Source: Penicillus capitatus
Taxonomy: Eukaryota; Plantae; Chlorophyta
Direction: 5' to 3'
Assembly (NCBI GenBank): GCA_965649825.1
Contig: OZ287695.1
Coordinates: forward strand, 496,001-560,000
Length of the DNA stretch: 64,000 bases
A program made the position numbers and the translations under genes. The notes beneath the pieces were generated by a model. It worked only from the letters and a program-made list of their open reading frames with translations, searched no databases and was not told the DNA's origin. The first letter of the stretch is position 1; every line of letters begins with the position of its first letter. Positions 2,715-38,880 of the stretch are shown one piece after another.

Positions 2715-5306
2715 ATGTTCGCGCTTCGTCGGTCTTCGACAAAAGCACACTTCTCAAAGAAATGGCTCTTCGCGTTGACGTACTTGACGATGCACTCGCT
2801 GTTGCTGACGGCATGCGCGTCTGCCGATACTCAAGGTATGGTCAACCCAAACACCTGCTTTCGTACGAAGTTCACTTCTGCTGCGAAGCTTTGGACAACA
2901 CCGACCTGAGCTCCGAGTCGACCATAACCACGTACGAGAAAATAGTGGTAAGCGGTAGGATGTTTGTGATGCGAAAAATTGAGTCAATGAATGTTATGCA
3001 GGGAGGTGATACTGCGCCGCCTGGGAGGTTTCCATACACATGCAGCCTGAGAGAACGTGGCACTCACCGCCATATGTGTGGAGCGACGTTGTTCAGACGC
3101 GACTGGGTCCTGACGGCGGCTCACTGTGTGGACGTTAACTCTCGCGCCGCCATTGGCCTGTTGCCCATCGTCTACTGCGGAATACGCCACCGCAAGAAGG
3201 CGGAAGACGACCAGGTAACTGCGAATTACTCTCAAACAAAAGCAAGGCCTGTTGTATTGGCGTAGGTCTTCGATTCGGTCGCAGGATACATTCACCCCGA
3301 ATGGACAGGCGGCGCTGCACACGGACACGACGTGGCTATACTGAAGCTAGACAGAGACGCAAATTTGACATTGCCGCGTTTGGGTACGGGCAACTTCGCC
3401 TTGGACAAGGGACGGCTTCTTGCTGCCACGGGATGGGGACACACGGATTCCGGCGTCCCAGCAAAGAATTTGCAAGTGACGACGAAACTTGCCGTGGTCG
3501 GGCAAGACAAATGCAAAACACAACCCCAAGGCGTCGACGCTAAGAGCTGGATCTGCGCTGGAGGACTGCAGGAGGACACCTGCAAAGGTCATCTGGACTG
3601 ACCCTGCCCCATCGTCTGACGGGTAACATTCCGCGTTGTTCGGTAGGGGACTCTGGAGGTCCGCTGCTGCTGATGGACGCTCCTTACGGACAAATGGAGG
3701 ATGGGAAGCCGCAACGAGACATGATCGTCGGCATCACGTCATTCGGCTATACGGAAGATGACGCCGAGCCGTGTTCTGGAATTGAGCCTGCGATTTACAC
3801 GAGTGTCGACTATTTCCTCGAATGGATTGAACGGACCATCAACTGTCATCAGGAAGTGAGATCCGATAGTCACTCTTCGTCTTCAACACATGTACGCAGC
3901 ATTCGAGCTGCGTCGTGACGCACCAGATTAAGTTGATGGAGAAGAAGAAGCTCTATGCAACGTTCTCGGAATCAAAGATGATCGAAGTAAACTGCATACA
4001 AATCGGACAGTACACAGTTCTTTCTGCAGGAGATGCTCCGTGCCATTCGAACGGATAACTCCCTTGACGCTGAGGCTCTTATCTTGGCCGGTCTTTGTGT
4101 CAACACCACCTACGGAAAGAAAAACGATCCGTCACTTCCGAAACCAGATCGCTCGACTCTGCTACATGCAGCTGTCGCACTCAACGCTGTGCATTGCACT
4201 GAGGCAAGGCCGGAGAACGAATTAGCCGGACTTTAGACTTGTCGTCCTCTGGTGCTGGTCGTGGCCTATAGGTATTGATAAAGCATAAAGCAGGAATTGA
4301 AATCCGAAATGTCGATGGAGAGACCGCTATGCATTTGACGGCATCGCACGATAGCGTCGCGGTCGCAAAGGTCGACGAGATTGCTCTGCATTACATCGCT
4401 TTCTGACCATCGGTCGTGCAATCAGATGTTGCTACATCACGGGGCGGATCCAAATACGTCCTCCCGATACGCTTGGACACCGATTCTGCATGCGGTTAAT
4501 CATAGGCGCGTTCAACTCGTAAAGGTAAAATCCCTGTTTGTTTCGAGTCTCATGACAAAGATGGCTGAAGCTTCTCGTCGCCCATGGCGCGGACGTCAAT
4601 GCAGTTAACAACGTGTGTTGGACCCCGCTGTTTGTGGCAGCCGACAAAGGATACACTGCAGTTGTAAAAGTAGGAATCCCTTCCTTGTTCACCTGTTCCT
4701 TTCAAGAACGACGGATGGCAGATCTTACTTGATGCTGGGGCGGAGGTCGATGTTTTCGACGAAAAGAATTGGACGCCACTGCAGAAAGCTGCAAACCATG
4801 GATTGATACAAATTACGAAGGTCAGAATCACGCCTTCGCTCTTTTGTAGACTGAAAGACGATGAGATGCAGATGCTTATTGAAGCCGGTGCGAACATCAA
4901 CACCGCCAGCGACGATGGTGTGACTCCATTGCACGAAACAGCTTATCATGCCCACATCGAGATTCAAAAAGTGAACTGCGATTGTATCGGATAGCCGTGT
5001 CGATAGAGATGTTTGAAGATCCTCCTTGAACACGGTGCAGATACCGAAGCATTCACTTCTGGCGATGCAATGACTCCACTTCATATCGCAGCTTATCATG
5101 GGAAATTGCAAATGGCTAAGGTAAGCCGCCGATAACATTAACCTTCTCTTAAGTATAGGCATGGGCAGATGCTCGTAGCAGCCGGAGCAGACAAAACGAG
5201 CAGAGACAGGGGTGACAAGATTCCGTTCGAGCGTGTCTGCGAAAACAGAAACGCAAAGTGCTCGGAGAAAACTCGAGTGGCGCTCAACGAACTCTTGCGT
5301 GTTTAA
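2715..5306 (+). CDS. Secreted trypsin-like (S1) serine protease fused to C-terminal ankyrin repeats, multi-exon
   Basis: Signal-like exon 1; spliced activation site YEK|IV-GG; LTAAHC, HDVAILKL and CKG-DSGGPL triad motifs intact; then ankyrin exons (TPLH/GADVN motifs) 4272-4370, 4426-4524, 4571-4669, 4722-4820, 4872-4970, 5019-5120; stop TAA 5304-5306. Confidence 0.88.
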
Positions 5307-10609: not shown

Positions 10610-12650
10610 TCAATGTTTGGACATCCCGGGCGACTGAAGGGGTGTGAATCGCGGCTTCTTTGCCTTCAGGATGTTGTACGTTAGCCAGTAATTGAAGAGC
10701 ATGACCTTGGCGTTGCGCAAGATCGATGCTTCGACGGTTATGTTGTCGAATCCAAGCCACGACAAAACATCGTCGCCGTTTTTCATCATCGCGCGTTCTT
10801 TGCCCGAATCGTCTTCGCCGAATTCCACTCCGGAGAACTCGTTAATGCACATCCCTTGAAAGCCATTCTGAATCAGTGATGCATTGGGCACCCACTTCAG
10901 CGCTTTGGCCGTGCTGTGCGTGGCTTTGAATTGGCCGCCGAATACGATAAACAACAACATGACCATGGGGCCCATGCTCATCGCCACGTCCGTGTTCGGC
11001 GCCAGTCCGCCGACCGAGAGGCCGAGCGCCGCACTGGCAAAGGACTCCACCAGCACGATGCCGATGAACCTCGAGGCACGGGTGTGTGACGGATGGAGTC
11101 CAGCCATTGAGTAGAGGATCGTGCCGAAAGTGCACGACAGCAAAACGCCGACCGGAATCTCCGACAGAATCTTGGCAAAGAGATAAGGCAGCACGCCATA
11201 CGCTTTCTTGGCGCGTTCCCGCGTCACGATTGTCTGCTCGGACGGGAAAACGTTGAGCGTCTTGACGAGCGACGACATCGCAGCATTCACCGCCGTCAGC
11301 TGCAGCAATCCCACACGATCTTGCACGGCTGAGGCCACGAGCTTCGTCCGGTAATAGATGCTTCCAAAGATCAAGGCGGATCCAACGTTCATACCCAGAC
11401 GGGCGACGTTTGTCTTCTTATCACGGCGCGCCTGTTTCCAAGAGCGACCGAGGAGCAAACGAAAATCGCGTAGCCAGCTGGAGCGACGCGTAGATGTCGC
11501 GCCTACGGTTACGCCGTTCGGCACGATCTCTTTGTTCGTCGGAGCTGGTGGCTTGAACTCTTCGTGCCGGTGACGGTCCCATTCCCGAATGAGCTGCTCG
11601 ATGCGCTTCTCTGAGAGCTGGAGTGCATCGGGCGAGGAGGTATCCAACGAGATCAAATCTGCAAAGTACTCGGCGGGGTTGTAGTGATCCGGACACATAT
11701 GGCCGAGCAATGCAAAGTACCCCATCGCCCGTTCGGCTTCACCGCAGTAGACGATCTTGCCGTTCGCCATCAAGACGAGATCGTCAAAAAGTGAGAAGAC
11801 ACTGCTGCGGGGTTGGTGGATGGTGCAGATGATGGTGTGCCCGTCGTGAGCGAGGCGTTTGAGTGCACTCATGACCTTCTCGGCCTGAAAGGCATCGAGT
11901 CCCGTCGTTGGTTCATCGAGAAACATCAAGACGGGCGAATTGAGCAATTCGCACCCAATACTTAAGCGCTTCTTCTCGCCGCCACTCAATCCACGCGTCG
12001 AGGCGTCGCCGATGTACGTGTCGGCGCAACTGGCCAGACCGAGCTTGTCGATGAGGGCCGTCACCAGACGATTGCGTTCGGCGATGGACATGTCGGGCGG
12101 CAGACGCAGGGCGCAAGCCATCGTCAGTGTCTCGCGCAGCGTCAGCTGAGAGTAGAAGAGATCTTCTTGCTGGACATACGCCTGCCGAATGGCGTCGTCG
12201 GTCGTCACCGAGATGTCGTTCATCTCGATCCTCCCCGTGAACTTCATCTTCGCTGAGAAAGGGACCTGACGGGCCAGAGCGTTGAGGAGGGACGTCTGTG
12301 TGTGAGAAAGAGTGAGAGAGGTGATGTGACAGGTGTTCGTATACTTTGCCGGCGCCCGATGGGCCCATCACGGCAAGGAGACGACCAGGATGCGCGACTC
12401 CGTTGACGCCATCGAGGATGTGACGTGTCGTCGTGCCCTCTCGTGTCTTCTGTTCGAGATCGAGTCGCAGATCCGTCCATCTGAGTGTGACCCCCGATTC
12501 GGCAGAGGTTGCGAGGTCGACACCATCTTTTGCCTCATCACGTCGTCGTCTGAAAAGACCCTTGATGGCCTTCGTCCCGCAATACGCGGCGAAAATCGGC
12601 AGCTGATAATTCGAGGAGACGATCGCCGCGCTTCCGAGCAAAAACTCCAT
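10610..12650 (-). CDS. ABCG (White-type) half transporter, plant ABCG7-like
   Basis: Walker A GPSGAGK, signature LSGGEKKRLSIG, Walker B FLDEPTTGLD, TIHQP, then an ABC2 membrane domain. One intron near 12300-12345; the start could lie further upstream. Confidence 0.93.
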
Positions 12651-13112
12651 CCTCAGAAATGTAGGTACGTTCGGTGCGACACGAAATCCTGATCGATCGA
12701 TCGATCGGACGAGATGCGATGTGATGTGACGTCCACAGTCCAAGACAAAGACAACAAAGAAGAATGCGCAGTCATAGATACAAAGGAAGCCAAAAACGAA
12801 TAAGAGATGGTGTAAGAGTGCGTCACGGTAGTTGTTGAGTCCGTCATCATCATGACCATCATCAAGCTGTCGATTGAGAGCAATAAAAAATCGTGATCGA
12901 CTGGAACAGCATCACATCATATTCAAGCTTTAAATGTGCACGTATGTGTGAGAAGGAGAGACCATGTGTGCCTCATTAAGTCTTCTAAGGGAAAGGTCAA
13001 CAGGAAAGAGGGTATTCATGCAATACCTCCCTCCGATGGATCTCGACAACGCGTTTCTTTCCCACGGCAATGTAACAAAGAGCGGATCGATGGCGATACG
13101 TGGTGCTCCGTT

Positions 13113-15974
13113 TTAGAGCAACGCACAGAATTGACGATAGAGATAGCACGGACGGCATCTCTTGCCGGCTCTCAGTGTACAGCTCCATGCCATTCCTTGC
13201 TTCCCATACTGTCCAGCAGAGCTCGGATGCAGAATCCTGGCCAACAGTTCCAAACCGTCGATCAACCGAGGACCCGCCATCGAAAACAGTTTGTGATCAC
13301 AGACGTACAGCTGACCCGTTTTCATGGCCGGCATTCCCCACCACCCCGGGAGACTTGCTAACTGTGCGAGTTCCTGCTTGGTCTCTTCCCACGATGCCGC
13401 TGCCAAGATCATGACCTCAGGTTCCATGGCCTTCAGTTCTTGCCATGTCATGCGCTGCGGTGCATGACCAGGTCTGGCACCCAGAGGCTCGCCACCTGCT
13501 AAGGATACCATTTCTGGAATCCAGTAACCGCCGATCATGAGTGGATTCAGACAGGTGAGCACCACCACCTTCTCCACAGGAAAATCCGATGCCACCAATG
13601 TGCCGATTCTGGCGACTCTGGCGCGCAGACGGTCGACGATTTTGGACGCCGCGTCCTCCACTCCAGCCGCTTCGGCAATTTCGAGCATAAACTCCAGGAT
13701 CTCACTCAAATGACGGCACTTGTGTGCCAGTATCGTTGTCGGTGTCGTTCGGCACAGACCGGTAAAGGATCCCTTACGTGCCTTGAAGATCTGTTCCATT
13801 TTCGATCGATCTGGATCGCCGCCGTCTTCCACCACCACCAAAGCCGGCTGCTCCATTCTGAGGAATTCCTCATTGATGTCAAAAGCGCTCTCCTGACGGC
13901 ACCAGTAGTCTTTGAGTTTCAGTTCCAGTCGACTGTCGTCTAGGTGCATCGCCTCGAACTTTGTCGTGGCGACGACGGTTCGGCCCGATTGAACGTCGGG
14001 GGGATAGGTGCAGATATTGGTCACGCCTACCAAACGTTTCTCCAGTCCGAGGGCGCAAATCATTTCGACGCCTGTGACGGACATCCCAACGATCTTTCCA
14101 TCGTCCACGCTATCCTTAAGACCCACAGCAGGTGTCACATCACTCGTCACAGTACATGATTTGTGGGGGAGGTTTTTCTTGGTCGAAAACATATCCGTCG
14201 GTAAATCCGGCACCGGTACTTCGCAAGCAAGCACCGGAATCTGAAAAGGCGTCTTCTTCTGCGGGAAGTCTTGGCTGTGGCGAGGGAAGGAGGCGTTGGA
14301 GACATTCCATTGCTTGCAGACTTTCTCCTGCGGCATGCCGGAATCGAGGGACGGCATTTTCTGGCTGACGAAATTGCGTTTGGCGCTTTCAAAAGCATTC
14401 ATCTTCATCCAGCTGCGGTGCATAGCTTCTTGACACTTGAGAAGATTCACGCGACGGCATCGATCGACAAAAGACGGTGCCAGTCTTGGATTGCTGGCGA
14501 ATTGGAGATGGACGTAACTGGCGAGGACGGCGTTGCGTGTGTAGCCCTCCTTCGCGACGCCGTGTTTCGAGATCTCACCCGACAGACGGTAGGTATAATC
14601 GAATTCCAGCTTCTCTCCAGCTTCCACGCTTCCCCACGCCGAACGCACGATCTCTTGGACGATGTGACTGCCGTGGCAGATGTGGCCTTTGGCCTGTAAA
14701 CCGGACGTGAACAGCGGGCAGTTGTTGAGAATCTCCACCGATACGTAGCCGCTTTCGTCTGGCGATCCTTCAGACATGCGTGTGCGGAAAGGAAAGACGC
14801 CGACCATGTTGTACGGGGGATACTCATTGAGTTGTTCAATGCTGCGTGAGAGATAGAGCAATCCGCCGCCTTCGGCATAGATCACACCACCCGATGCCGC
14901 AAAGGCACGAATCGACGCCATGAGTGCGGCGTTCTTAGACAGACGCGCGGCGTGGAGTTCCGGATGACCACCTCCCAAGTAGATTCCCGAAACGTCTTTG
15001 GGCAAACGAACATCTTCTAGGGGGGAAAAGAAAACAAGTTCTGCTCCAGATCTTTCCAACATCATGAAGTTCCTATGCATCACACATAGCAAAAGAGTGA
15101 GATGGTGGGCACGGGGAAAAGAGTGAGAGTGCGTACTCGTGATAGTAAAAAGAAAAAGCAGCATCTTTCGCAACAGCAATTTTGACAGCGTTCTGCGCAA
15201 CGGGCAGCGTCGCATCATCGTCCGGGCCTTTCGGCACCTTCGCCAGCATCGAAACCTCGATGCACTTTGAGGTATTGAGTTCCTGTGCCATTTTGGAGAG
15301 GTCGTCCAAGAAGGTCTCCATCGATGCACGATGTCCATCTCGCGGCGTCTTGGGTGTGATATCCATAGCCGTAGCGATGGCAGCATTCTCCGGTAAGAAT
15401 CCCAGACTCTGTGCCTTGACGCCCACTTTTTCGAACGTCTTCGTCAGCATGGCGGCGTGATCGGCATTGTGGACACGATTGAGGACGATCCCTGCGACTT
15501 TGACTTTCTTATCGAACGTTTCGAATCCCTTGACCACTGCGGCGCAGCTCTGCCTCATGGGTGCGGCATCGACGACCAAGATAACGGGCGAGGCGAGAAA
15601 ACGAGCCAGTTCAGCTGTACTCCATTCGTCCGTATCGCTTCGACGGTCAAAGAGACCAGCGCTGCCGTCCACGACGGCGACATCGCACTCGGCGCCGTAG
15701 CGATGGACACATGAGAGCAGACAGTCCCTCGGTACATTCCAGGGATCAAGATTTACCGCCATGCGTCCCGTTGCGGCCTCAAACAAATCGTTCTCGCTAA
15801 ACCCTGGTCCGAATTTGAACGCTTGAACCCGAAGGCCTTGTTTCCTGTGCAGATGTGACCATCGCGATGCGCCGAGGAAAAGAGGGTGCCCAACCTGAGG
15901 CCATTCATAATGGAGATCGAGACGGTGGTGGACCCGGCGCCGCTGTGGGTACCCGATACGACAAGCACTTTCAT
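13113..15974 (-). CDS. cobB: CobB/CbiA (cobyrinate a,c-diamide synthase)-like pseudoenzyme fused to a C-terminal BtuF/TroA-type binding domain
   Basis: MKVLVVSGTHSGAGSTT...VQAFKFGP..LDP, VVDGSAGLFD, GIVLNRV, IAVAKDAAFSFYY, YLGGGHPEL, IYAEGGGLLYL, ASYVHL; then KIVGMSVTGVEMICALGL..RLVGVTNICTYPP, IGGYWIPEMVSLAGG, FSMAGPRLIDGLELLARILHP. Three short introns. Confidence 0.9.
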
Positions 15975-16233
15975 TTTGTTGCGTCGGTCGGTTTGTTCGT
16001 TTGTTCAGCTATGGGTTGGTACGTTCGTCTATTGTGGACTGTCTGTATGGACGATGTGGCTGGACGGCGACGACGGTGTTGATAAGAATCGAAAATGAAA
16101 ACGCGAAAAACGCAGAGATAGATGCATGCGCGATTTCGGATAGACACCTTGCTGTTAACAAAATGCAAACGTCACATCATTCTCGCCAACGTTTGGTACG
16201 ACTAGATGGATGGCTGAACATCGAGACATGCGT

Positions 16234-18227
16234 TTAGAAATCGCCGAGATTCCACATATTGTCCGGGTCCATCTTTGACCAGGTCGATCGATCTTGCTCG
16301 AGCTCCGCTGGCGTCAGGAGGCATTCTTCGAGGGCGGATCGAATAGCAGGGAGGTGCGCCGCTTCGCCGATGACGACGATCTGCTGCTTGCGATCGCCAA
16401 AGACGGAATGCCAAGATGCGTCCGTTTCTGCCCAGAGCTCTTCGGGAAGCATCGACGAGCGCCACGTTTCGATCATATTGAACTGAACGGAGCGTCCGGC
16501 AGTAGACCAGTTGAGCTTGACATCGAAGTACGTGGCTATGTAGAAAAACCCTTTCGATCGGTATGCTTTGAGCATAAGGGAATCTTCTGCCATCATCAAT
16601 TTCTCATAGTTATCGTCATCGTCATCGTCCTCTTCTTTCTCTTCTTTCTCATCCTCCTCGTCGTCCTCATCTCCGTCCTCTTCATCGTCCTCATCTTCCT
16701 CCGTCGCTTCTTCGGTAGCTTCATCGTCCTCGTCGTCTTCAATGTCGCCAAAAATAAGTCGGTGGAGACGACCGGGATGAAAAGGCAGATGAGAGGTGAA
16801 GACGAAACTGCCGATGCCGAACTCTTCTGTTTCAGGGGTATGAGGCGAGATGAGCTCCGTGGCGAAGCCTTCGAATTCCGCTGCCTTCTTTGGGTCAAAC
16901 CGTCCGGTATGCATGACTTCGTTCAGGTCGATCTGGGCCCGAATGGAGGACAGCTGTTTCGCCGTTGGATTGAGATGCTTGAGCAGACCCTGGATCTTCT
17001 GAACCTCAGGCTTCGAGATGAGGTCACACTTATTGACGATCAGCGTGTCGGCGAATTCCACTTGCTCGATCAGGAGGTCCGTGATGCTACGGATGTCGCC
17101 ATCGTACGCAGACATATTGCGATCCTTCAACAGCTGGTTCTTCTTGATCTCTTGCATAAAGAGACTCCCATCGATCAGCGTCACCTACAGTGCACGTGCT
17201 GGTGGGGCAGAGGTGTCGGGGAAGGACCATGTTGTCGATTTTGAAGAATTCTTTCAGGGAACGCCCTTCGGCGTCTTGAGCAGCAAAGCTCGCTGCGACA
17301 GGCATCGGCTCACTGATGCCCGTCGCTTCGATCAGGATCGCGTCAAAGCGTTTTGCACAGAGCATCTTGGTCGCGGCCTAGTCACACTTTCTCACACATT
17401 GTGATCCGCGTGTCAAGTCGCTGACTTTGATGAGATCGCCGCGTAAAGTACAGCACACACAGCCGTTTGTGAGTTCTACCAGCTCCTCCTCTACTTCGGA
17501 AAAAGAGTGACTTTGCTGCACGAGATGGACATCGATATTGATTTCGGCCATGTCATTGACGAGCACGGCTATGCGCTGGCCATCAGCGGACTCAGAGAGC
17601 AAACGGGTCAGCAATGTCGTTTTCCCTGCGCCGAGGAATCCAGAGAGCACGACGACGTCGATGGGTTGCTCAACACCTGTCACATCAAACTCATACACAG
17701 ATTTTTTGCTGACGTGACCTGCAGCGCGGATCTCCTCGAGAGCATCGCGAATCAGTGTCGGATCCTCGTCATCATCATCAGGCGCCACGCGCATAGCGGC
17801 GATGCGAGATGTCATATAATCCCAAGTGGGATTCTTTGCGTCCACGGCGCGTCCTTGAGAGATGATTTTCTCTGCCTCGTCGAAGAGATTTTGCTGCACG
17901 AGTACCAGAGCTTGACGCTGATAGCCGCCACCCCATTCGGGTCGCATCTCCACCACACGCTTCGCATCGGCCAGCGATAAATCGTGCTTGCCTTGCAAAT
18001 CGTACGCCATCGACCGGTCGCACAAAATGCGCGTCACCTGTTCCGCGTCAACGCCAAGCGTCGTCGCCCGCTCCAACGCAGCCGAATACATCTCCACCGC
18101 CTCGTCCCATCGCTCTATTTCGCACAGCGCGTCACGCATCAGCCGAAAGGCGGTGCGAGGGTGAACCTGTGACGAAGAGAATGTCGCCTTTCTTCTTCAG
18201 CGACTCCAGAGAGTCGGCGTCGCTCAT
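16234..18227 (-). CDS. TPR-COG0523 (CobW/ZigA/YciC family) G3E GTPase metallochaperone, copy 1
   Basis: MSDADSLESLKKKGDILF..TPR; LSGFLGAGKTT, VNDMAEINID, GCVCCTLRGDL, EATGISEP, EQVEFAD, NKCD, CobW_C (RSKG, GDRKQQIVVIG). D/E-rich insert at about 16605-16745. Three introns. Confidence 0.92.
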
Positions 18228-18293
18228 GTTCCAGAAGGCCAAAGAAATGCGCAGCGCAATGGATCATTATGAAGCGACGTGGCCCACAAGACG

Positions 18294-18879
18294 ATGTTCG
18301 TCCTGCGTCGAACAGCAGGACGCTATGTTGCCCCATTCACCTCGCTTGTCTCCAGTCCTCTCTCGATCCCTCACGCCACTGCGCTCTGGCAAACGACTGG
18401 GGGGACACTCGGCGGCGGCGGCGGCGCCGAAGACAGGCGACACTTGTCTGAGATGACGCGCGAGGCGGTGCTCGGGTGGAGTCCCGTCGAGACCGTCGCC
18501 GTTACACTGGACCGTCTGCATCATGCGACGCAGCTGCCGTGGTGGGCGATGCTTTCGCTCACGGCTATCAGTCTGCGAGCCACGATGTTTCCCTTCACCA
18601 TCAAACAGGCGAGAGATGTGCGTCTCTTCTGTGCTCTGTATCCGATCTCCGCCGTGGACGCAGATCCAGTCGACGGGACCCACGATGAGCTGCATCTCTC
18701 AGGCGGTCAGAATTGTCCGCGCCAAGAAAAAGAGTGAGAAGAATACGAAATGGTCCTTGGTGGATGCAAAGAATGTGCTCGGTAAATTTCGAAAGCTGGC
18801 AAAGTACTCCGATGCACCCCATCCGGCTTGGGTGATCTGTGCCCCTCTCATCCAAGTACGCACCATCTGTGTTCACCTG
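18294..18879 (+). pseudogene. Disrupted OXA2-like insertase, copy 1, 5' part (the interrupted intron resumes at 34694-34752)
   Basis: Near-identical to 37296-37878. Interrupted in an intron by the LTR element; the 3' half is deleted. Confidence 0.9.
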
Positions 18880-18998
18880 TGTAGACCAAGCTTACCAAGG
18901 TAGTAACCAGCAGCTCCAAAAGTTGAACTGCAATCATTCTCTTACAACAGAATATCTGATGACAAGAATGAAGAAAACATTTATCTTTCGTCTCGACA
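18880..18998 (-). repeat. 3' LTR, internally deleted (119 bp)
   Basis: Matches both ends of 34334-34693 but lacks 242 bp between two gttacc sites. A purine-rich GGGGAGCG abuts it on the minus strand. Confidence 0.9.
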
Positions 18999-19099: not shown

Positions 19100-21921
19100 G
19101 GATTCTAAGCATTGAAGAATGAGGTATGGCCCAGACCAAGGAGCTTGCAGCTTTGACAGGATTTTCCTAGGACGTTCGACAGAAGGACTTGTATTCCAGC
19201 TCTCAGTTTGGGCCCTTTTCTACGGACAGCTTCACGTTTTTCATGCCATTTGAGGCGTTCTGTACGTGTGTTTGCCCTAGCAAATTCCTTTCGTTTTGTC
19301 CATTCTGCAGGATCCAATAAATCGCCCTTGTAATCGAGGCCAAATCTGAGTTCTTTCGGGAAGCAACGCGTGACCCTGTGAACAGAGGAATTGATTGCGT
19401 CCTGAGATCTCTACACGAGCTGATTCCAAGGGTTGTGCGTTGCCATCTGTAAACGTCGAATCCTGCCCAAGAGCGTCTGAATCGTTCTCTCGACAAGACC
19501 GTTGGATGAGTGAGGATACGATGCGCTGAATCTGAGATCCATCCCACGATGCTTGCTCCAAGCGACGAAAACGGGAGAAGTGAATTGAGAACCAGAGTCC
19601 GCCACGACCATCTGAATCTTCCTATGTTTACGTATCCAATCGTCGAGGAGTTCCTCAACTCGTTGTCGTCTGGGAGAGCGCACTGTGCGTGTCTCCACCC
19701 ATCGGGAGAAGTAATCGACGGCAACCAGAATACATTTCGACGGAGCTCTGGTTTGTTGTGACAACGGTTCCAATACGTCGATATTAACCACGTCTGAGAC
19801 TTCACTGGCTTCTACGAATCCCAGATCTTCTCTGAATCTGCGTTTTGCACAATTGACAGGCCTCACAAGTCTTGGACACGTGCTCAGCAAATTTTTTTTG
19901 CCGCGGGACCATCCCACGGAGTCTTGGAGAGAGATAGTTTCAAGTTTGACGCCGAATAGTGTCCCCGCGCATGAGTGTCTTCTATTCACTCCCTGGCTTG
20001 CCCGTCAAGTTCCTGTTGAGCCGCCACTGGGTAGGCACAGACTTCAGACGACGACGCAGATTCGTTGCTTTCTTCATCGCTGTAGACATACGACTCTTGT
20101 AACGACGCTGTTTCACAGTGATCGTCCTCCATCTCACTCTCCATCTCACACTTGTTGTCTTCGCCGTCATACATCAAGAATTTCTGGCGCGAGAGAAGGT
20201 CCGCCAGTTGGTTTTCCGAGCCCGCTTGAAATCTTACTAAGTGATAATCTCTCAGGACCTCTTCCATTCTTCTCAGCATGAGCGTACTCTGGCTCTTCCA
20301 ATTCCACATTTTGGCAGACGCCCAGCTGTCTGTGAAAACGACAATCTGCCGTCCTAGGGCCAGGTGACGAAACGTTCTCAACGCTTGCGGCAGCGCATCC
20401 AATTCGGCTTCTGACGAGTGAGCCCACGGTTTCTTGTTCCTCCTGCTCATCATTGCGACAACGTTGCCGCTTTTGTCCATTAACGCCGCACCATAACCGG
20501 CAGCAGAGGCATCTACCACCATCTTCAACGACCCACTCCCATTCCAGTAACCAAGCTGTTGAAGTTGGTCTTGACAGGAGCGCAACAGACACTCCCAGAA
20601 TCGTCCAAACTCTGTCGTCTGAAATCTCTTGGCTTCCGCCTTTTTCCATGGTTCTAATGTGCGAAGTATGACGTCTCGACGCCAGGAATAACGATTCAAT
20701 TGTAACAACAGCCCTTCGACCGTTCTCAGATCCTTTGCACATTTTGGCTTGGGCAGATCGTTAAGCTTCCTTATCAAACCGTTGCTCGGTCTGATTCCTT
20801 CTGGGCATAGTTCGGCACCAAGGCACTCAACGGAATCGGTGCATCACTTGGATTTCTCGGCATTTAGCCACCACCCATCATGACCGAGCTCAGAGAAAAC
20901 AGTGTTTAAGTCCCGCAAGTGTTCCTCTGGGGTGTCTGATCCCAACATCAAATCACCAACATAGTAAAACAGAACACTAGATCTGTTCAGTTTTTTCACA
21001 ATTCGGGACAAAGTTATAGACAGAGCTTTTTGGAAATGTCCCATGCTCGATACCCAGCCAAAAAAGCATGTCTTGTATTGAAAGAATCGTGACTTGAAGA
21101 AAACCCCAAAAAAAGTCCGAATCTCTGGAGCCAGAGGCACCTGCATGAATCCCTTCCTCATATCGATGACAGACCAGACCGTCTTCTTCGGCATGTGTCC
21201 CAATAAACACATCCTGTCTATGGGAATTCCTTGCACCGAAACAGTCGCAGAATTCAGCGCTCGGAAGCTCATAACCACTCTTTTCTTGTTTCCTTTCTGT
21301 GGCACGGGTATGAGTGGCGTCAGGATGGTGGGAGGCCTTGCCACTTCTTCAACCGCACCGATCTCGACGAACTCCTGTATCTGGGCCTGAATCTGATCCT
21401 CCACGGCAGGTGCCAACGGACGGCATGGAATCGCTGAGCAGTCGACGTAATCTTTGAGTCCGAGATCGTCCACACAGTAGTGCTTCACACCTGGGAACTT
21501 CCTTTCGCACAGACGCGGGTATTGCCTCCAGAGGTCGTCCATCGACCGCTCTTCGTCCTCAGCATCATCGATGTCTGACACTTCGCCGTTTTCCTCTCGC
21601 GTTACTGTGTTCAGCTTCTGGCGACGCTGTCGTTCCAAAGCGTCTCTCGGTAAGAGACTCGACCCGCCGACTTTCTTCAGAACCACTTGCTCGTCTGCCT
21701 TGACTTGGAAGGCTGCCATCATGAATTTGCTTCCCAGCTGTTCAGGCCGGTCGCCTGGATTCCTCAGAGACATTTTGATCCTTTTTCCAGCTCCTTTAAT
21801 GCACGGCTCGATCATCACACTTCCTGCGTTGCCAGTGGGCATCAACGCGGCGTCTCTGTTCAAGATTCGACACGGTAGTTGGAATCTCACGGATGATCTG
21901 GGGCGAGAAAGGCGGACTTCC
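19100..21921 (-). pseudogene. Gypsy pol: RT, RNase H and integrase (frameshifted, with stops)
   Basis: RT VIDMRKGFMQVPL..FFG..YYVGDLML (YVDD changed to YVGD); RNase H VVDASAAGYGAAL..ELDAL..VFTDS; integrase NIDV..VDYFSRW..VADSGSQFTS..SNGLVER, and PWSGPY. Confidence 0.92.
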
Positions 21922-24194
21922 ATCTTTCCTATTCTCCGTACGGCACTTACGTTCCGCCCGCTAATTTCCCTTACTGAACGCCGGTGTCCGCACACGAGAA
22001 CAACGCACGATGCAGCCTTCCGGCTCGACGTCCGAAGGCCCTGGCACCGCCCCCGACACCGTGCGCACGGCGATAGCCCAAGCGGCCCACACGGTTCGGT
22101 ACCGACGCGATCTGCGCCGGTCCCCCGAGGTGCTCGCAGCTATGAGCAAGGACGAGCTCATACTGGTCAACGCCGCTGTCAAGGCCTGCTCCACTCAAGT
22201 CGCCGCCACCTTGGACTCCGCACAGCTCGTCGAGAAGATCAACGCCTACCCGACTGCCCACGAGCGTCGAGATGCCGAGCAGCTCCACCTCATTAGCCTA
22301 CACGAGCGCTCCAGAGAATCGCTTCTGCTGGCTCCCGAAAGGCCCATCTACGACACGAAATCCCCGGTGCCCTGTCTCTCGCAGACCGTTCGTTTCCAAG
22401 AGAAAGTTACTCCCTCAGATCTCCTGTCAATATTCACTGTTGTATTGGCTTCTTCATAAGGGTCATCATGAAGATGAAGGGAAGATGATGCGCGGAACAT
22501 AAGACGTCGCTGTCGCCGTTTGATAGGTCTGCTTGCTCCTCTTCGCCAATGTACGTCTCGGAAGGCCCGGGGTCACAAGGTCGTCGGAGCGAAGGCCACG
22601 AAGTCGATGCCTCGGTCCGCGGAGCTTTGCTAGGTGTTATAAAGTCCAACGTTGTGGACGATCTGCTCCGCGCCCCGCTGGAGGAGCTACGCGTGTTCCC
22701 CTCGACGGAACTGGTCGAGATCCTCCTGGAAAGTTGGCTATTGCGGTCCGTACGGAATATACGCGGGTGTACTGTCTTACTCGGTGTCGTCGTCATAGAG
22801 ACAGAGAAAGCCGAGATGAAAGGTTAACAACAACAAACAAAGGGCAAACAACACAGCGTATCCTGAGCCTCTTATTCAGTCTAGGCGATGTGACATTCTA
22901 GGCAGATGATTCATCTTACTTCTACGACCAAAGAAAAGCGTCCCTTGAAGCCCAAGGGTCCCTTCTGACATGACAGCCAGCATCCGTGTCAAAGAATGGC
23001 GCAATTTTGATGGAGCGTTGATGGGACGGTAATTTAATCAGTGGCATTTCTGTCACTTGGTGTTTCGTGCCTTTGGCCGCACGACGTGACCGTCGCCGCT
23101 GAGTCACGATGAGTAGGGATAAATCGCGATGACTAGGAGTGAGTTCTTGTGAAGTTTGCGCTGAAGTTCTTTAAAGCTTCTAGAATCTCATTGGGGACTC
23201 ATCCTGGAAATTCACATGTTTTCCCGCCATCGCGTCAGGGACCAAGTATTCAAGCAAGAGTCGGACACATAAAACATCTATCAGTTTACGTTTACCTCTA
23301 CGTCTGTGTCTACGAACACTTCACTCGTCAAAAACATCGGTTGTTCTTGCTGTAATAAAATTGTCTCTTGCCTGCACTTCTTGCTTGGTTCTCGACATCC
23401 TAGCCCTGCCTGGTGTCATCTTATTCTAAGACTTCCGTCGCTTGTGAGATGAGTCAACACGGAGACGATTCCCGGTCTCTCACTCCTCCCCCTGAAGTCT
23501 GAGAGCAATATGGAAGCGAAAGCGGCATCCATGTCAACGTTAGTAATATCTGGGACGAAGTGGAGAATGAGAAAGCCAGCAAGCAATCGTCACGCGTGAA
23601 CTTCAGCTAGACAGCCGAGTCCGGACTGGATGGCGAACCGCACAGGGAAACTGACGGGGATTCGACAGACTCTGGCACGACGCGAACGCGCCAACGCGTG
23701 TGCGGAGATAAAGGAACTGACTAGAGTCAAAGCTAAGACTGATTACATGGTGAGTCCAGTCGGTTAAGTACCCTCGGCACCCGCGGACCCCTGTCACGTC
23801 AGGAAACGGACAGCCTGTCCGGTCCGCAGGGGCCCCAACCGTTGTCCTCTACCCATCAGAAACCCTGTCCGCAATGTAGACATACATACTTAGACGAATA
23901 CATCAGAACAGTTCCCTTGTAAATACTCGGAATGACGTCAGTCCTCTCTTATGCCATCATCGTGCATGATGAGCCTTTAGCGCAACGAACGTCACCATCT
24001 GTTCAAACACATGACCCCTGTCTTCCAAGATATGCACATCGTCATGAGAATCTTAGCGACAGTTATATCGTTACAAGAGGCATGATAGCATCATGACGTA
24101 AGGCATGAATGACATCATGCATAGAAAGAATATAAAAAGTTGGTCTTCGTACAGAACAGAACTTTTAAGACTCTCCTCTACTTCGTTTCAAAAA

Positions 24195-34693: not shown

Positions 34694-34752
34694 ATCTGTC
34701 ACCTCACAGGCAGATTCTGTCACTCCAGATTCCTGCCTTTCTCACATGTGTG

Positions 34753-35160: not shown

Positions 35161-35245
35161 TTGCTGTTAACAAAATGCAAACGTCACATCATTCCCGCCA
35201 ACGTTTGGTACGACTGGATGTTTGGCTGAACATCGAGACATGCGT

Positions 35246-37229
35246 TTAGAAATCGCCAAGATTCCAGATATCGTGCGGGTCCATCTTTGACCAGGTCGAT
35301 CGATCTTGCTCGAGCTCCGCTGGCGTCAGGAGGCATTCTTCGAGGGCGGATCGAATAGCAGGGAGATGCGCCGCTTCGCCGATGACGACGATCTGCTGCT
35401 TGCGATCGCCAAAGACGGAATGCCAAGATGCGTCCGTTTCTGCCCAGAGCTCTTCTGGAAGCATCGACGAGCGCCATGTTTCGATCATATCGAATTGAAC
35501 GGAGCGTCCGGCAGTGGACCAGTTGAGCTTGGCATCGAAGTACGTGGCTAAGTAGAAAAAACCTTTAGATCGGTATGCTTTGAGCATAAGGGAGTCTTCT
35601 GCCATCGTCAATTTCTCATCGTCCCCGTCCTCTTCTTTCTCATCTTCCTCCATCGCTTCTCCATCCTCCTCGTCGTCCTCGTCTCCGTCCTCTTCCTCAT
35701 CTTCCTCCATCGCTTCTCCATCCTCCTCGTCGTCCTTGTCGTCTTCAATGTCGCCAAAAAAGAGTCGGTGGAGACGACCGGGATGAAAAGGCAGATGAGA
35801 GGTGAAGACAAAGCTGCCGATGCCGAACTCTTCGGTTTCAGGGGTATGAGGCGAGATGAGCTCCGTGGCAAAGCCTTGGAATTCCTCTGCCTTCTTTGGG
35901 TCAAACCGTCCGGTATGCATGACTTCGTTCAGGTCGATCTGGGCCCGAATGGAGGACAGCTGTTTCGCCGTTGGATTGAGATGCTTGAGCAGACCCTGGA
36001 TCTTCTGAACCTCAGGCTTCGAGATGAGGTCACACTTATTGACGATCAGCGTGTCGGCGAATTCCACTTGCTCGATCAGGAGGTCCGTGATGCTACGGAT
36101 GTCGCCATCGTACGCAGACATATTGCGATCCTTCAACAGCTGGTTCTTCTTGATCTCTTGCATAAAGAGACTCCCATCGATCAGCGTCACCTACAGTGCA
36201 CGTGCTGGTGGGGCAGAGGTGTTGTGGATGGACCATGTTGTCGATTTTGAAGAATTTTTTCAGGGAACGCCCTTCGGCGTCTTGAGCAGCAAAGCTCGCT
36301 GCGACAGGCATCGGCTCACTGATGCCCGTCGCTTCGATCAGGATCATGTCAAAGCGTTTTGCACAGAGCATCTTGGTCGCGGCCTAGTCACACTTTCTCG
36401 CACATTGTGATCCGCGTGTCAAGTCGCAGACTTTGATGAGATCTCCGCGTAAAGTACAGCACACGCAGCCGTTGGTGAGTTCTACCAGCTCCTCCTCTAC
36501 TTCGGAAAAAGAGTGACGTTGCTGCACGAGATGGACATCGATGTTGATTTCGGCCATGTCATTGACGAGCACGGCCATGCGCTGGCCATCGGTGGCCTCA
36601 GAGAGCAAACGGGTCAGCAATGTCGTTTTCCCTGCGCCGAGGAATCCGGAGAGCACGACGACCTCGATGGGCTTCTCAACACCTGTCACATCAAACTCAT
36701 ACACACAGATCCTTTGATGACGTGACCTGCAGCGCGGATCTCCTCGAGAGCATCGCGAATCAGTGTCGGATCCTCGTCATCAGGCGCCGCGCGCATATCG
36801 GCGATGCGAGATGTCATATCATCCCAAGTGGGATTCTTAGCGTCGACGGCGCGTCCTTGAGAGATGATCTTCTCTGCCTCGTCGAAGAGATTTTGCTGCA
36901 TGAGTACCAGAGCTTGACGCTGATAGCCGCCACCCCATTCGGGTCGCGTCTCCACGACGCGCTTCGCGTCGACCAGCGCATAATCGTGCTTGCTTTGCAT
37001 ATCGTACGCCATCGACCGGTCGCACAAAATTCGCGCCACCTGTTCCGCCTCAACGCCAAGCGTCGTCGCCCGATCCAGCGCAGCCGAATACATCTCCACC
37101 GCCTCGTCCCATCGCTCTATTCCGCACAGCGCGTCACGCATCGGCTGAAAGGCGGCGCGAGGGTGAACCTTTGACGAAGAGAATGTCGCCTTTCTTCTTC
37201 AGCGTCTCCAGAGAGTCGGCGGCGCTCAT
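35246..37229 (-). CDS. TPR-COG0523 GTPase metallochaperone, copy 2
   Basis: Same exon structure and motifs as copy 1, all frames open. The acidic insert is rearranged (39-bp unit repeated 57 bp apart at about 35640-35735). Confidence 0.92.
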
Positions 37230-37295
37230 GTTCCAGAAGGCCAAAGAAATGCGCAGCGCAATGGATCATTATGAAGCGACGTGGCCCACAAGACG

Positions 37296-38880
37296 ATGTT
37301 CGTCCTGCGTCGAACAGCAGGACGCTATGTTGCCCCATTCACCTCGCTTGTCTCCAGTCCTCTCTCGACCCCTAACGCCACTGCGCTCTGGCAAACGGTT
37401 GGGGGGAAACTCGGCGGCGGCGCCGCCGAAGACAGGCGGCACTTGTCTGAGATGACACGCGAGGCGGTGCTCGGGTGGAGTCCCGTCGAGACCGTCGCCG
37501 TTACACTGGACCGTCTGCATCATGCGACGCAGCTGCCGTGGTGGGCGATGCTTTCGCTCACGGCTATCAGTCTGAGAGCCACGATGTTTCCCTTCACCAT
37601 CAAACAGGCGAGAGATGTGCGTCTCTTCTGTGCTCTGTATCCGATCTCCGCCGTGGACGCAGATCCAGTCGACGGGACCCACGATGAGCTGCATCTCTCA
37701 GGCGGTCAGAATTGTCCGCGCCCAGAAAAAGAGTGAGAAGAATGAGAAATGGTCCTTGGTGGATGCAAAGAATGTGCTCGGTAAATTTCGAAAGCTGGCA
37801 AAGTACTCCGATGCACCCCATCCGGCTTGGGTGATCTGTGCCCCTCTCATCCAAGTACGGACCATCTGTGTTCACCTGTCACCTCACAGGCAGATTCTGT
37901 CACTCTAGATTCCTGCCTTTCTCACATGTGTGATCAGCATCCGGCGAATGTGCCAACAGCAATGGCCTGGATTTACTGAAGGCGGAATTCTGTGGTTCAG
38001 CGATCTCACGCAATCGACGGCCCACTTTGCCGAAATGACAGCACAGATAGGACCCATTGGCGCTACCTTGCCCATCGCGATCACCGTCTCTTACCTGCTC
38101 CACATCCAACTGTCTTTTCGCAAGGGTCACATCGCCGCCAGTGCGACACAACCCTCAAGTCTCTTCCCATATCCTCCTGTCTGACGTCCATCCATTCTTG
38201 CAGACACAGGTCAGGCGCTGTCTCGGTTGTTGAAGGTGGCGCTGGAATGGCTCTGCGTTCCTATTCTCGTCGTTACCCTTCAGTTACCTCAAGGTGCGTT
38301 AGTCTACTGGCTCACAAGTTCGCTCTGCTCTGTGAGTCAAAGCGTCCTGTTGGGTAACAGCGCCATTCGTCAATCGCTGCGTCTGCCGAAGCTCCAGGAG
38401 ACAAGTCATCACGACATCCTGTCTCGATTCACGCCCCAAGTGATGGATCTCTTTATTCGCGCCGCCGAACAGCGCGCCAAAGGAAGCTACGAAGAAGCTA
38501 TCGCGACACTGCGACACATCGTCCAAGTGGATCCCCACAATCCCCGTGCGCACTACGCCTTGGGGCAGCTCTTCGGCGAACAGCAGAGATGGGAAGACGC
38601 CGCATCGAGCTATCGATCGAGTCTGACCTACGAACCCGATCCCCAGCTGCGCTCCAGAGGTTTTCTGGGCCTCGGCGTGGCAGAGTTCATGAAAAGCGAT
38701 TTCGACGCCTCCGAGCGAAGCTTGACGTCTTCCCTGAAGCTCGATCGCTCGAACGTCGCCGGATGGATGGCGCTGTGCAGTCTCTATAAGAGGATGGGCG
38801 ACAGCGACCGCGCCGCCGCCGCCCTGCAACACGCCATCGACCTCGATCCGAAGTGTAAACAATGGGAAAAGCATCTCTAG
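37296..38880 (+). CDS. Mitochondrial Oxa1/COX18-family insertase with C-terminal TPR (plant OXA2-like)
   Basis: Presequence MFVLRRTAGR; LHHATQLPWWAMLSLTAISLRATMFP; GGILWFSDLT; GALVYWLTSS; C-terminal TPRs; stop TAG 38880. Confidence 0.88.

What the first reader, a model, noticed from the sequence alone, without database searches (positions are those of the whole stretch)
10610..18227. Operon-like co-oriented trio: COG0523 GTPase, CobB-BtuF and ABCG transporter
Three adjacent minus-strand genes, 260 bp and about 460 bp apart, combine a metallochaperone family, a corrinoid enzyme/binding-protein fusion and an ABC transporter. These functions co-occur in bacterial cobalamin and metal loci. Caveats: the GTPase motifs (NDMAEINID, GCVCCTLRGDL) fit the YciC/ZigA/nitrile-hydratase-activator side better than true CobW, and the ABCG is of eukaryotic type, so the linkage could be chance in a compact genome.
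Basis: partly seen in the sequence, partly recalled or inferred. Interest (0 to 1): 0.7.

Follow-up and report, generated by a model that had tools for sequence, protein, structure and literature searches.

The report
Neighbouring algal genes, not an operon
Three adjacent same-strand genes of a siphonous green alga are real: a zinc-chaperone-type GTPase, a catalytically dead CobB enzyme fused to a BtuF-like binding domain, and the plant-wide ABCG7 transporter. Their adjacency looks like ordinary inherited gene order in one algal lineage rather than a vitamin-B12 or metal operon, and the dead-enzyme fusion is the only unusual part.

Summary
Three spliced minus-strand genes lie 259 and 462 bp apart: a TPR-COG0523 GTPase (616 aa), a CobB-PBP fusion (915 aa) and a half-size ABCG (663 aa).

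The window is a metagenomic contig of a green alga of Bryopsidales, nearest to Caulerpa.

The functional-cluster reading is not supported.
- The ABCG is the orthologue of land-plant ABCG7, which is present throughout Viridiplantae.
- The GTPase is ZigA-like, not CobW. It is the intact copy of a recent 2.7-kb duplication.
- The trio, or the CobB-PBP/ABCG pair, recurs only in close relatives whose flanking genes are collinear too.
- The genes are unlinked in Bryopsis, Ostreobium, Chloropicon, Myrmecia, Trebouxia, an unnamed alga and the oomycete Aphanomyces.
- The ORFs are far too long for the known green-algal polycistron mechanism.

The interesting part is the fusion. It belongs to a eukaryote-only clade of CobB homologues joined to a leaderless, Cys-motif binding-protein domain. 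In Bryopsidales this protein has lost the P-loop lysine, the glutamine-amidotransferase (GATase) cysteine, other catalytic motifs and a CxxC, yet it stays well conserved. I read it as a non-catalytic cytosolic tetrapyrrole or corrinoid binder. The ligand is untested.

The parts
16234..18227 (-). TPR-COG0523 (G3E) GTPase gene, copy B, intact. 616 aa; 4 exons (18227-18167, 18114-17426, 17377-17228, 17184-16234). N-terminal TPR, Walker A GFLGAGKTT, CxCC (GCVCC), acidic insert, CobW_C.
   Evidence: model, Pfam. ZigA 393.5 bits, CobW 114.8; bacterial ZigA at 48-52% identity; TPR-bearing orthologues in Bryopsis, Ostreobium and Coccomyxa.
15975..16233 (-). Spacer of 259 nt between the COG0523 stop and the CobB-PBP start.
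   Evidence: No TGTAA or AATAAA; no Rfam family.
13113..15974 (-). CobB-PBP fusion gene. 915 aa; 3 exons (15974-15895, 15844-15137, 15072-13113). No N-terminal leader.
   Evidence: NF002204 CobB 357.9 bits against cut-off 254.
15927..15953 (-). Degenerate P-loop GTHSGAGST (residues 8-16). The Lys of GK[ST] is replaced by Ser15 (codon 15932-15930).
   Evidence: GK[ST] is present in the other relatives listed, apart from a few gapped or misaligned rows.
14868..14870 (-). Gly331 at the position of the glutamine-amidotransferase nucleophile Cys (YAEGGGL instead of YAECGGL).
13206..14090 (-). Class III binding-protein domain (Peripla_BP_2), residues about 591-885. Keeps Cys617 (NICTYPP), GGYWIPEM and GPRLIDG; lacks the family's CxxC.
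13116..13205 (-). 30-residue C-terminal tail with G-K-R-C-R-P. It is the best conserved stretch of the protein (90-96% to Caulerpa and P0001).
12651..13112 (-). Spacer of 462 nt between the CobB-PBP stop and the ABCG start.
10610..12650 (-). Half-size ABCG transporter (NBD then TMD), 663 aa, 2 exons (12650-12345, 12295-10610). Orthologue of plant ABCG7.
35246..37229 (-). Second COG0523 copy (A) in the same exon layout. A 2-nt TG insertion at 36706-36707 shifts the frame between the TPR and GTPase parts, so it is a probable pseudogene or an assembly error.
16149..18880 (.). Proximal arm of a 2.7-kb direct duplication (95% identical to 35161-37879).
35161..37879 (.). Distal arm of the same duplication. 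It adjoins the ancestral upstream neighbours (TPR gene, ORC5-like, fasciclin at 37.9-42.2 kb).

Best explanation
The region holds three separately functioning nuclear genes of a siphonous green alga (Bryopsidales, on the Caulerpa side). Their adjacency is inherited gene order, not a functional unit. Gene 1 is a TPR-tagged COG0523 GTPase of the ZigA/YciC type. By homology it most likely works as a GTP-dependent zinc metallochaperone. Gene 2 is a member of a eukaryote-specific clade of CobB/CbiA homologues fused to a leaderless class III binding-protein domain. In Bryopsidales both catalytic centres are gone, so it cannot make amides. I infer that it works as a cytosolic binder (carrier, buffer or sensor) of a tetrapyrrole, most plausibly a corrinoid. 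Gene 3 is the orthologue of plant ABCG7, a half-size exporter-type ABCG found in the chloroplast outer envelope in Arabidopsis. Shown here: gene structures, family assignments, loss of the catalytic motifs, distribution of the adjacency, and the duplication. Inferred: the zinc role, the ligand class, cytosolic location, and separate transcription.
For: Adjacency is limited to relatives that are collinear over the whole block. L004/L005 carry the trio, and their flanks also match the window in order: L004 129-3717 to window 42171-37460, and L004 10501-12065 to window 10463-8988. L006 and L011 carry CobB-PBP followed by ABCG plus the next downstream gene; their near-identical spacers show they are one lineage. 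Elsewhere the genes are unlinked. Ostreobium, Chloropicon, Myrmecia, Trebouxia, alga L012 and Aphanomyces also lack the linkage. ABCG7 orthologues at 46-49% identity occur in land plants, and no land-plant CobB-PBP appeared in the search. COG0523 scores ZigA 393.5 bits against CobW 114.8. None of 80 metagenomic loci holding relatives of the binding domain has a COG0523 neighbour. The ORFs of 1.85, 2.75 and 1.99 kb contrast with the short ORFs (medians 444-876 nt) of green-algal polycistrons. Catalytic loss: P-loop Lys and GATase Cys are missing only in the window/Caulerpa/Bryopsis/Ostreobium clade plus a few scattered sequences. GPDxxD, VEG and PERHLGL are altered as well. Continued constraint: synthetase 56-59%, GATase 63-64% and PBP 73-75% identity to Caulerpa, against about 20% in the linker.
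Against: The CobB-PBP to ABCG adjacency persists in three lineages at 59-76% protein identity with short spacers (146-462 nt). After the COG0523 duplication, the copy next to CobB-PBP stayed intact while the distal copy carries a frameshift; that could hint at position-dependent value, or be chance. Expression was not testable. In the Caulerpa lineage only one contig pair (L006/L011) could be checked; the published Caulerpa genome was not. No ligand has been shown for the fusion.
Confidence: 0.7

Rival explanations
1. One reading: the three genes form a co-regulated corrinoid/metal module. The chaperone loads metal, the fusion binds or modifies a corrinoid, and the ABCG moves it.
For: Same strand and short spacers. 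The trio is kept in L004/L005. In bacteria CobB precedes cobalt insertion; from general knowledge, CobW supplies that cobalt. The alga's relatives use B12 (Ostreobium has METH).
Against: No linkage outside the collinear clade. The GTPase is ZigA-like. CobB is catalytically dead here. ABCG7 also exists in land plants, where no CobB-PBP was found. From general knowledge, a binding protein docks on type II importers of the BtuCD kind, not on ABCG exporters. No riboswitch or other Rfam element was found. L006 has 937 bp upstream of CobB-PBP with no COG0523.
Confidence: 0.08
2. Only the pair is functional. In the Caulerpa-side lineages the non-catalytic CobB-PBP hands a tetrapyrrole to the plastid-envelope ABCG7, and selection keeps the two genes together.
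For: The pair is adjacent in the window, L004/L005 and L006/L011. ABCG7 is a chloroplast outer-envelope protein in Arabidopsis. The binding domain belongs to the haem/B12 structural group.
Against: The gene beyond ABCG is conserved in the same contigs, so general collinearity explains the pairing. Bryopsis and Ostreobium have the same dead-enzyme fusion and ABCG7 unlinked.
Confidence: 0.1
3. The genes are expressed as one polycistronic mRNA of the kind described in Chlamydomonas and Chromochloris.
For: Spacers of 110-460 nt overlap the reported inter-ORF medians of 212-260 nt. No TGTAA signal lies between the genes.
Against: Reported polycistronic ORFs are short (medians 444-876 nt) and a later study attributes their translation to leaky ribosomal scanning. 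Here the upstream ORFs are 1.85 and 2.75 kb. TGTAA is also absent downstream of the last gene, so its absence says nothing.
Confidence: 0.03
4. The CobB-PBP protein is still an amidotransferase that uses non-canonical residues.
For: The whole-protein score passes the CobB equivalog cut-off. His396 of the GATase motif is retained, and all domains are under constraint.
Against: Five separate catalytic motifs changed together on one long branch. Gly cannot replace a thiol nucleophile, and the Walker A Lys is missing.
Confidence: 0.05

Closest known systems
CobB/CbiA, cobyrinic (hydrogenobyrinic) acid a,c-diamide synthase, and its paralogue CfbB (Ni-sirohydrochlorin a,c-diamide synthase)
   Same: Same two-domain architecture (DTBS-like ATP-binding synthetase + GATase_3). 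It is homologous end to end over residues 1-470. NF002204 scores 357.9 bits, TIGR00379 315.3 and CfbB 298.6.
   Different: It is eukaryotic and fused to a binding-protein domain, with no corrin pathway around it. In this clade the Walker A Lys, the Cys nucleophile, PERHLGL and acidic residues are lost. It is a pseudoenzyme, not a member by function.
BtuF (periplasmic B12-binding protein) and ShuT/PhuT/RhuT haem-binding proteins
   Same: Class III (PF01497) two-lobe fold. The AlphaFold model (pLDDT 87.5) matches 4m7o, ShuT 2r7a and BtuF 5ysc/1n4a with TM-scores (normalised to the target) of 0.75-0.81.
   Different: It is not secreted: it sits at residues 591-885 of a leaderless protein. Haem binders and B12 binders score alike. 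The BtuF equivalog model gives no hit. Its true relatives are leaderless proteins of about 315 aa carrying Cys and CxxC motifs.
ZigA / YciC-type COG0523 zinc metallochaperones (eukaryotic counterparts: ZNG1, Chlamydomonas ZCP; named from my own knowledge)
   Same: G3E GTPase with CxCC and a CobW_C domain. Best NCBIfam model is ZigA, with 48-52% identity to bacterial ZigA over the core.
   Different: It has an N-terminal TPR module and an acidic insert. The score is below the ZigA equivalog cut-off (393.5 against 600). Metal specificity is untested.
CobW (cobalt chaperone of the aerobic B12 pathway)
   Same: Same COG0523 superfamily and motifs.
   Different: TIGR02475 scores 114.8 bits against a cut-off of 332.1. 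No cobN/S/T was found nearby.
Plant ABCG7 (WBC7; AT2G01320)
   Same: Half-size NBD-TMD ABCG, with 46-49% identity over more than 90% of its length. Every land-plant hit in the best 120 that carries an ABCG number is called ABCG7. ABCG7 is reported in the chloroplast outer envelope.
   Different: Its substrate is unknown in any species, and localisation in this alga is untested.
CBA1, the algal B12 acquisition protein with a BtuF-like predicted fold
   Same: It is a eukaryotic algal protein whose predicted fold resembles BtuF, and it is proposed to bind B12.
   Different: CBA1 has a signal peptide, is ER-targeted and has no CobB part. The present protein is leaderless and fused to CobB. No sequence relationship between the two was tested.
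Bacterial cob/btu operons and green-algal polycistronic loci
   Same: Co-oriented, closely spaced genes.
   Different: The trio has no conserved linkage across lineages. The ORFs are too long for leaky scanning, and each gene has its own introns.

Membership tests
CobB/CbiA a,c-diamide synthase | End-to-end homology to the family model above its curated cut-off | tested here: met
   NF002204 scores 357.9 bits (cut-off 254) and TIGR00379 scores 315.3 (cut-off 261.4).
CobB/CbiA a,c-diamide synthase | Walker A P-loop GxxGxGK[ST] with its lysine | tested here: not met
   The window has GTHSGAGST. GK[ST] is present in nearly all other sequences of the 91-sequence set; the Lys is absent only in the window, P0001, P0002, Caulerpa, Bryopsis and Ostreobium.
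CobB/CbiA a,c-diamide synthase | Glutamine-amidotransferase nucleophile Cys (AECGG) | tested here: not met
   YAEGGGL in the window and in P0001-P0010. Cys is present in the other relatives except P0019, P0046, P0060 and P0068.
CobB/CbiA a,c-diamide synthase | Conserved GPDxxD, VEG and PERHLGL motifs of the synthetase domain | tested here: not met
   GPGFSEN, VDG, and PERHLGL absent in the window.
CobB/CbiA a,c-diamide synthase | ATP- and glutamine-dependent amidation of a corrin or sirohydrochlorin | not testable with these tools
   This needs an enzyme assay.
BtuF | Class III binding-protein fold (PF01497) | tested here: met
   Pfam E-value 7e-16. Foldseek TM-scores up to 0.81 (normalised to the target) to BtuF and ShuT.
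BtuF | Match to the BtuF equivalog model, or closer to B12 binders than to other ligand classes | tested here: not met
   No NF002894 hit at E <= 1e-3. Profile against PDB: 4m7o 2.3e-20, ShuT 2.8e-17, Vibrio BtuF 8.2e-17, E. coli BtuF 5e-6.
BtuF | Secreted, periplasmic, and partnered with a BtuCD-type importer | tested here: not met
   The domain is internal to a protein that starts directly with the CobB P-loop. The neighbouring transporter is an ABC2-type ABCG.
BtuF | Binds cobalamin | not testable with these tools
   This needs a binding assay.
CobW | Score at or above the TIGR02475 cut-off | tested here: not met
   114.8 bits against 332.1.
CobW | Genomic association with cobN/S/T | tested here: not met
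   No such domain in the 26 large ORFs of the window that were scanned.
ZigA/YciC-type COG0523 | Best-scoring subfamily model and nearest homologues | tested here: inconclusive
   ZigA is the best model (393.5 bits) but is below its 600-bit equivalog cut-off. The nearest bacterial hits are named ZigA, at 48-52% identity.
ZigA/YciC-type COG0523 | G3E GTPase motifs and CxCC | tested here: met
   GFLGAGKTT, GCVCC and NKCD are seen in the model sequence.
Plant ABCG7 | Half-size, NBD before TMD, nearest named homologues ABCG7 | tested here: met
   No explicit ABCG-wide tree was built.
Green-algal polycistronic locus | Short ORFs on one capped transcript, translated by leaky scanning | tested here: not met
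   The ORFs are 1851, 2748 and 1992 nt, against reported medians of 444-876 nt. The transcript itself is not testable here.
Conserved functional gene cluster | Adjacency retained in lineages that have otherwise lost collinearity | tested here: not met
Linked only where the flanks are collinear.

The most novel reading that the evidence does not exclude
The eukaryotic CobB-PBP proteins are an unrecognised class of cytosolic corrinoid or tetrapyrrole handlers. They would be catalytic in trebouxiophytes, Chloropicon, oomycetes and others, and converted to a binding-only carrier in Bryopsidales. In the Caulerpa-side lineages this carrier would work together with the adjacent ABCG7 (and perhaps the COG0523 GTPase) to move a corrinoid or other tetrapyrrole across the plastid envelope. 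That would make the neighbourhood a genuine eukaryotic functional gene cluster.
Probability: 0.07. Interest if true: 0.75.

Novelty: new variant of a known kind. Interest (0 to 1): 0.3.

Why it matters
As a 'B12 operon in a eukaryote' the finding does not hold, and this is worth recording so that it is not propagated from domain names alone.

What remains is useful in a smaller way. A CobB homologue with no pathway around it is conserved in green algae and oomycetes, always fused to a leaderless binding-protein domain. I found no description of this family in the papers searched; records label it 'hypothetical protein', 'Fe/B12 periplasmic-binding domain-containing protein' or 'CobB/CobQ glutamine amidotransferase'.

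Bryopsidales offer a natural experiment in which catalysis was discarded but the protein was kept. How algae handle B12 inside the cell is poorly known; the CBA1 work says the mechanism is still unclear. A cytosolic tetrapyrrole-binding protein of this kind is a cheap, testable candidate.

The result also warns that 'cobalamin synthesis' annotations (CobW, CobB, BtuF) in algal genomes and transcriptomes should not be read as B12 metabolism.

Tried and rejected
1. Synteny in more distant ABCG7-bearing contigs (L010, L013). Both contigs end about 250 bp upstream of the ABCG gene, so they say nothing.
2. Poly(A) signal test (TGTAA, AATAAA) for separate transcripts. The signals are absent from every spacer and also downstream of the last gene, so the test is uninformative.
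3. Rfam scan of the whole window for a cobalamin riboswitch or other element: nothing found.
4. Bacterial context of the binding-domain family as a clue to function.
   - Neighbours are heterogeneous: squalene/phytoene synthase plus amine oxidase in many loci, and GFO/IDH, DapB, NamZ or aldo-keto reductase in others.
   - A CobB gene lies next to it in only three or four of about 66 loci.
   - Those CobB genes fall outside the eukaryote clade, so they do not explain the origin of the fusion.
5. The bacterial CobB-PBP fusion P0032 as ancestor. Its binding domain lacks the Cys1, GGxW and GPRL motifs, so it is an independent fusion.
6. Single-sequence PDB search of the binding domain was too weak to classify it. 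The profile search and the fold search placed it in the haem/B12 group without separating the two ligands.
7. Literature searches for a described eukaryotic CobB-binding-protein fusion. They found only a passing note of a CobB-like transcript in a prymnesiophyte.
8. Caulerpa lentillifera gene order could not be examined, because only EukProt protein records are available here.


Full report
**What is there.** The stretch 10610-18227 holds three minus-strand genes of a eukaryote.
- Reading the sequence and splicing at GT..AG introns of 43-64 nt gives clean reading frames.
- The first gene encodes a 616-aa protein with N-terminal TPR repeats, a cobW GTPase domain, an acidic insert and a CobW_C domain.
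- The second encodes a 915-aa protein with a CbiA/AAA_26 synthetase domain, a GATase_3 domain, a poorly conserved linker and a Peripla_BP_2 domain.
- The third encodes a 663-aa half-size ABC transporter, with ABC_tran followed by ABC2_membrane.
- The spacers are 259 and 462 nt.

**Where it comes from.**
- The window is part of a 613,634-bp contig of an ENA metagenome assembly (ERZ25074695).
- The fusion protein's closest named relatives are two paralogues of Caulerpa lentillifera (56-58% identity), then Bryopsis and Ostreobium (49-51%).
- In a tree of the CobB part, the window sits beside the Caulerpa sequences, with Bryopsis and Ostreobium outside. The two trees differ on whether Bryopsis and Ostreobium branch successively or group together.
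- The successive order, Ostreobium outermost, is the published order of the Bryopsidales suborders.
- So the organism is a siphonous green alga on the Halimedineae side. Unnamed metagenomic relatives reach 68-77% identity (P0001, P0002, P0007).

**Test of linkage.**
- I fetched the genomic surroundings of the fusion gene, or of the ABCG gene, in every relative that had a usable contig.
- The full trio, in the same order and orientation, is present in L004/L005 (Logan SRR33785046/45).
- The pair CobB-PBP followed by ABCG is present in L006 (JGI 3300001264) and L011 (ERR4592244).
- L006 and L011 have nearly identical spacers. In the tree, L006's protein (P0006) groups with Caulerpa paralogue b.
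- In these same contigs the genes outside the trio are collinear with the window as well.
  - L004 129-3717 (fasciclin, ORC5-like, a TPR gene) matches window 42171-37460 in order.
  - L004 10501-12065 matches window 10463-8988.
  - L006 also keeps the gene beyond ABCG.
- The 937 bp upstream of CobB-PBP in L006 hold no COG0523 sequence.
- Outside this clade nothing is linked.
  - In Bryopsis the fusion gene has LRR, TIP41 and unknown neighbours.
Its TPR-COG0523 is on a different contig.
  - Ostreobium, Chloropicon, Myrmecia, Trebouxia, an unnamed high-GC alga and the oomycete Aphanomyces also have other neighbours or different contigs.
What exists is ordinary collinearity among close relatives.

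**The ABCG.**
- Its homologues at 46-56% identity over more than 90% of the length span green algae and land plants. Every land-plant hit in the best 120 that carries an ABCG number is called ABCG7.
- Arabidopsis ABCG7 is reported in the chloroplast outer envelope.
- The gene is therefore present throughout Viridiplantae, including land plants, for which the search returned no CobB-PBP. This argues against a dedicated partnership.

**The GTPase.**
- The best NCBIfam model is ZigA (393.5 bits), far above CobW (114.8 bits; cut-off 332.1).
- The closest bacterial proteins are named ZigA, at 48-52% identity over the core. TPR-bearing orthologues exist in Bryopsis, Ostreobium and Coccomyxa.
- The gene is one arm of a 2.7-kb direct duplication: 16149-18880 against 35161-37879, 95% identical.
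- The distal copy (37229-35246) keeps the exon layout but has a TG insertion at 36706-36707. This breaks the frame between the TPR and GTPase parts.
- dN/dS between the two copies is 0.35.
- The roughly 16 kb between the copies hold a retrotransposon (RVT_1, RNase H, rve at 19411-21995) and VWA-domain ORFs.
- Comparison with L004 shows that the ancestral state was a single COG0523 gene between the TPR gene and CobB-PBP.

**The fusion protein, CobB part.**
- It passes the CobB equivalog model (357.9 bits against a cut-off of 254), so homology is not in doubt.
- Against 90 relatives it lacks the Walker A lysine (GTHSGAGST where others have GK[ST]). It also lacks the amidotransferase cysteine (YAEGGGL where others have AECGG).
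- It has further changed GPDxxD to GPGFSEN and VEG to VDG, and has lost PERHLGL.
- All these changes are shared by Caulerpa, Bryopsis and Ostreobium, and lie on one long branch.
- Fusion proteins of Myrmecia, Trebouxia, Chloropicon, Aphanomyces and unnamed picoeukaryote-like contigs keep every motif.
- CobB, CbiA and CfbB use ATP and glutamine to amidate the a and c acetate side chains. That the lysine and the cysteine are essential for this chemistry is my knowledge of the family, not a test made here.
- The Bryopsidales protein is still under constraint. Identity to Caulerpa is 56-59% in the synthetase domain, 63-64% in the GATase domain, 73-75% in the binding domain and 90-93% in the last 30 residues, against about 20% in the linker.
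- It is therefore a retained pseudoenzyme.

**The fusion protein, binding part.**
- An AlphaFold model built on 12 homologues is confident (pLDDT 87.5, pTM 0.85).
- It matches class III binding proteins. Haem binders (ShuT, PhuT, RhuT), B12 binders (BtuF) and an uncharacterised staphylococcal protein all score alike. A profile search of PDB sequences gives the same picture.
- The BtuF equivalog model gives no hit. 'BtuF' is thus a fold label, and the ligand class (haem-like or corrin-like tetrapyrrole) is an inference.
- The domain's real relatives are a large family: 1,389 clusters at E <= 1e-30 in the representative library and more than 511 metagenomic loci.
  - They are proteins of about 315 aa that are matched from their first residues. 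In 62 of 66 examined there is no room for a signal peptide.
  - They carry a Cys in xECDYPP (61 of 66) and a CxxC (63 of 66).
- Eukaryotic fusions outside Bryopsidales keep both Cys motifs. The window's clade has deleted the CxxC.
- The eukaryotic CobB parts form one clade (SH-like support 0.95, 27 tips). This points to a single origin of the fusion.
- A bacterial CobB-PBP fusion (P0032) has a different binding domain and is independent.

**How it most likely works.**
- Shown: the three gene structures, the family assignments, the motif losses, the distribution of linkage, and the duplication.
- Inferred for the GTPase: it acts as a GTP-dependent zinc chaperone whose TPR module recruits a client.
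- Inferred for the fusion protein: it has no leader and is probably cytosolic, and it binds a tetrapyrrole without modifying it. A corrinoid is the most plausible ligand, given the CobB ancestry and the fact that Ostreobium at least uses B12.
- Inferred for ABCG7: it does whatever it does in all green plants.
- I put 0.7 on the statement that the three act independently and are transcribed separately.
- The known green-algal polycistrons have ORFs with medians of 444-876 nt, and a later study attributes their translation to leaky scanning. Upstream ORFs of 1.85 and 2.75 kb do not fit that mechanism.

**What keeps the door slightly open.**
- The CobB-PBP/ABCG7 pairing persists in three lineages with short spacers.
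- The COG0523 copy next to the fusion gene is the one that stayed intact.
- Expression, interaction and the Caulerpa genome itself could not be examined here.

**Verdict.**
- The functional-cluster interpretation is not supported beyond lineage-limited collinearity.
- The CobB-PBP pseudoenzyme is a new variant of a known enzyme family, and the only part that merits follow-up.

Noticed in passing
window 16149-18880 and 35161-37879: A 2.7-kb direct duplication (95% identity) carries the whole COG0523 gene and its upstream region. The distal copy has a +2 (TG) frameshift at 36706-36707. dN/dS between the copies is 0.35.
   Followed up: yes
window 19411-21995 (minus strand): Retrotransposon pol ORFs (RVT_1, RT_RNaseH, rve) lie directly upstream of the trio, inside the ~16 kb that separates the two COG0523 copies.
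   Followed up: partly
window 725-2893 versus 24195-26368 (inverted, 86% identity); also 34752-35160 versus 39364-39769 (96%) and 18892-18998 versus 34588-34693 (94%): Further segmental repeats occur around VWA-domain ORFs (1-768, 26326-29829), with small rearranged fragments at the duplication borders. They suggest a locally unstable region.
   Followed up: no
window 61230-64000 (minus strand): ORFs with EF-hand pairs followed by FAD_binding_8 and NAD_binding_6 domains. This is a respiratory-burst (NADPH) oxidase-like gene, cut off by the window end.
   Followed up: no
L007 13555-14401 (Chloropicon) and L008 17395-24434 (Myrmecia): In two distant chlorophyte classes the gene immediately downstream of CobB-PBP, tail to tail, encodes a TBP-domain protein. 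This may be an ancient microsynteny. It is not seen in the window.
   Followed up: no
L015-L093 (JGI metagenome contigs), e.g. L027 951-1895: A large uncharacterised family of leaderless binding-protein homologues of about 315 aa, with a conserved Cys plus a CxxC. Many sit just upstream of squalene/phytoene synthase and a flavin amine oxidase. A few sit next to a CobB gene (L015, L050, L053).
   Followed up: partly
P0017, P0018 and the long proteins (1,200-2,400 aa): The oomycete-type versions of the fusion carry extra Kelch/beta-propeller repeats and a Cys-rich C-terminal domain (PF17653) after the binding domain.
   Followed up: no
P0004 and P0005 (Caulerpa lentillifera g2325, g4404): Caulerpa has two paralogues of the dead-enzyme fusion. 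This fits the whole-genome duplication proposed for Caulerpaceae.
   Followed up: partly
window spacers and L004/L006/L011 spacers: Neither TGTAA nor AATAAA occurs after any of the stop codons examined. This lineage may use a different polyadenylation signal from Chlamydomonas.
   Followed up: partly
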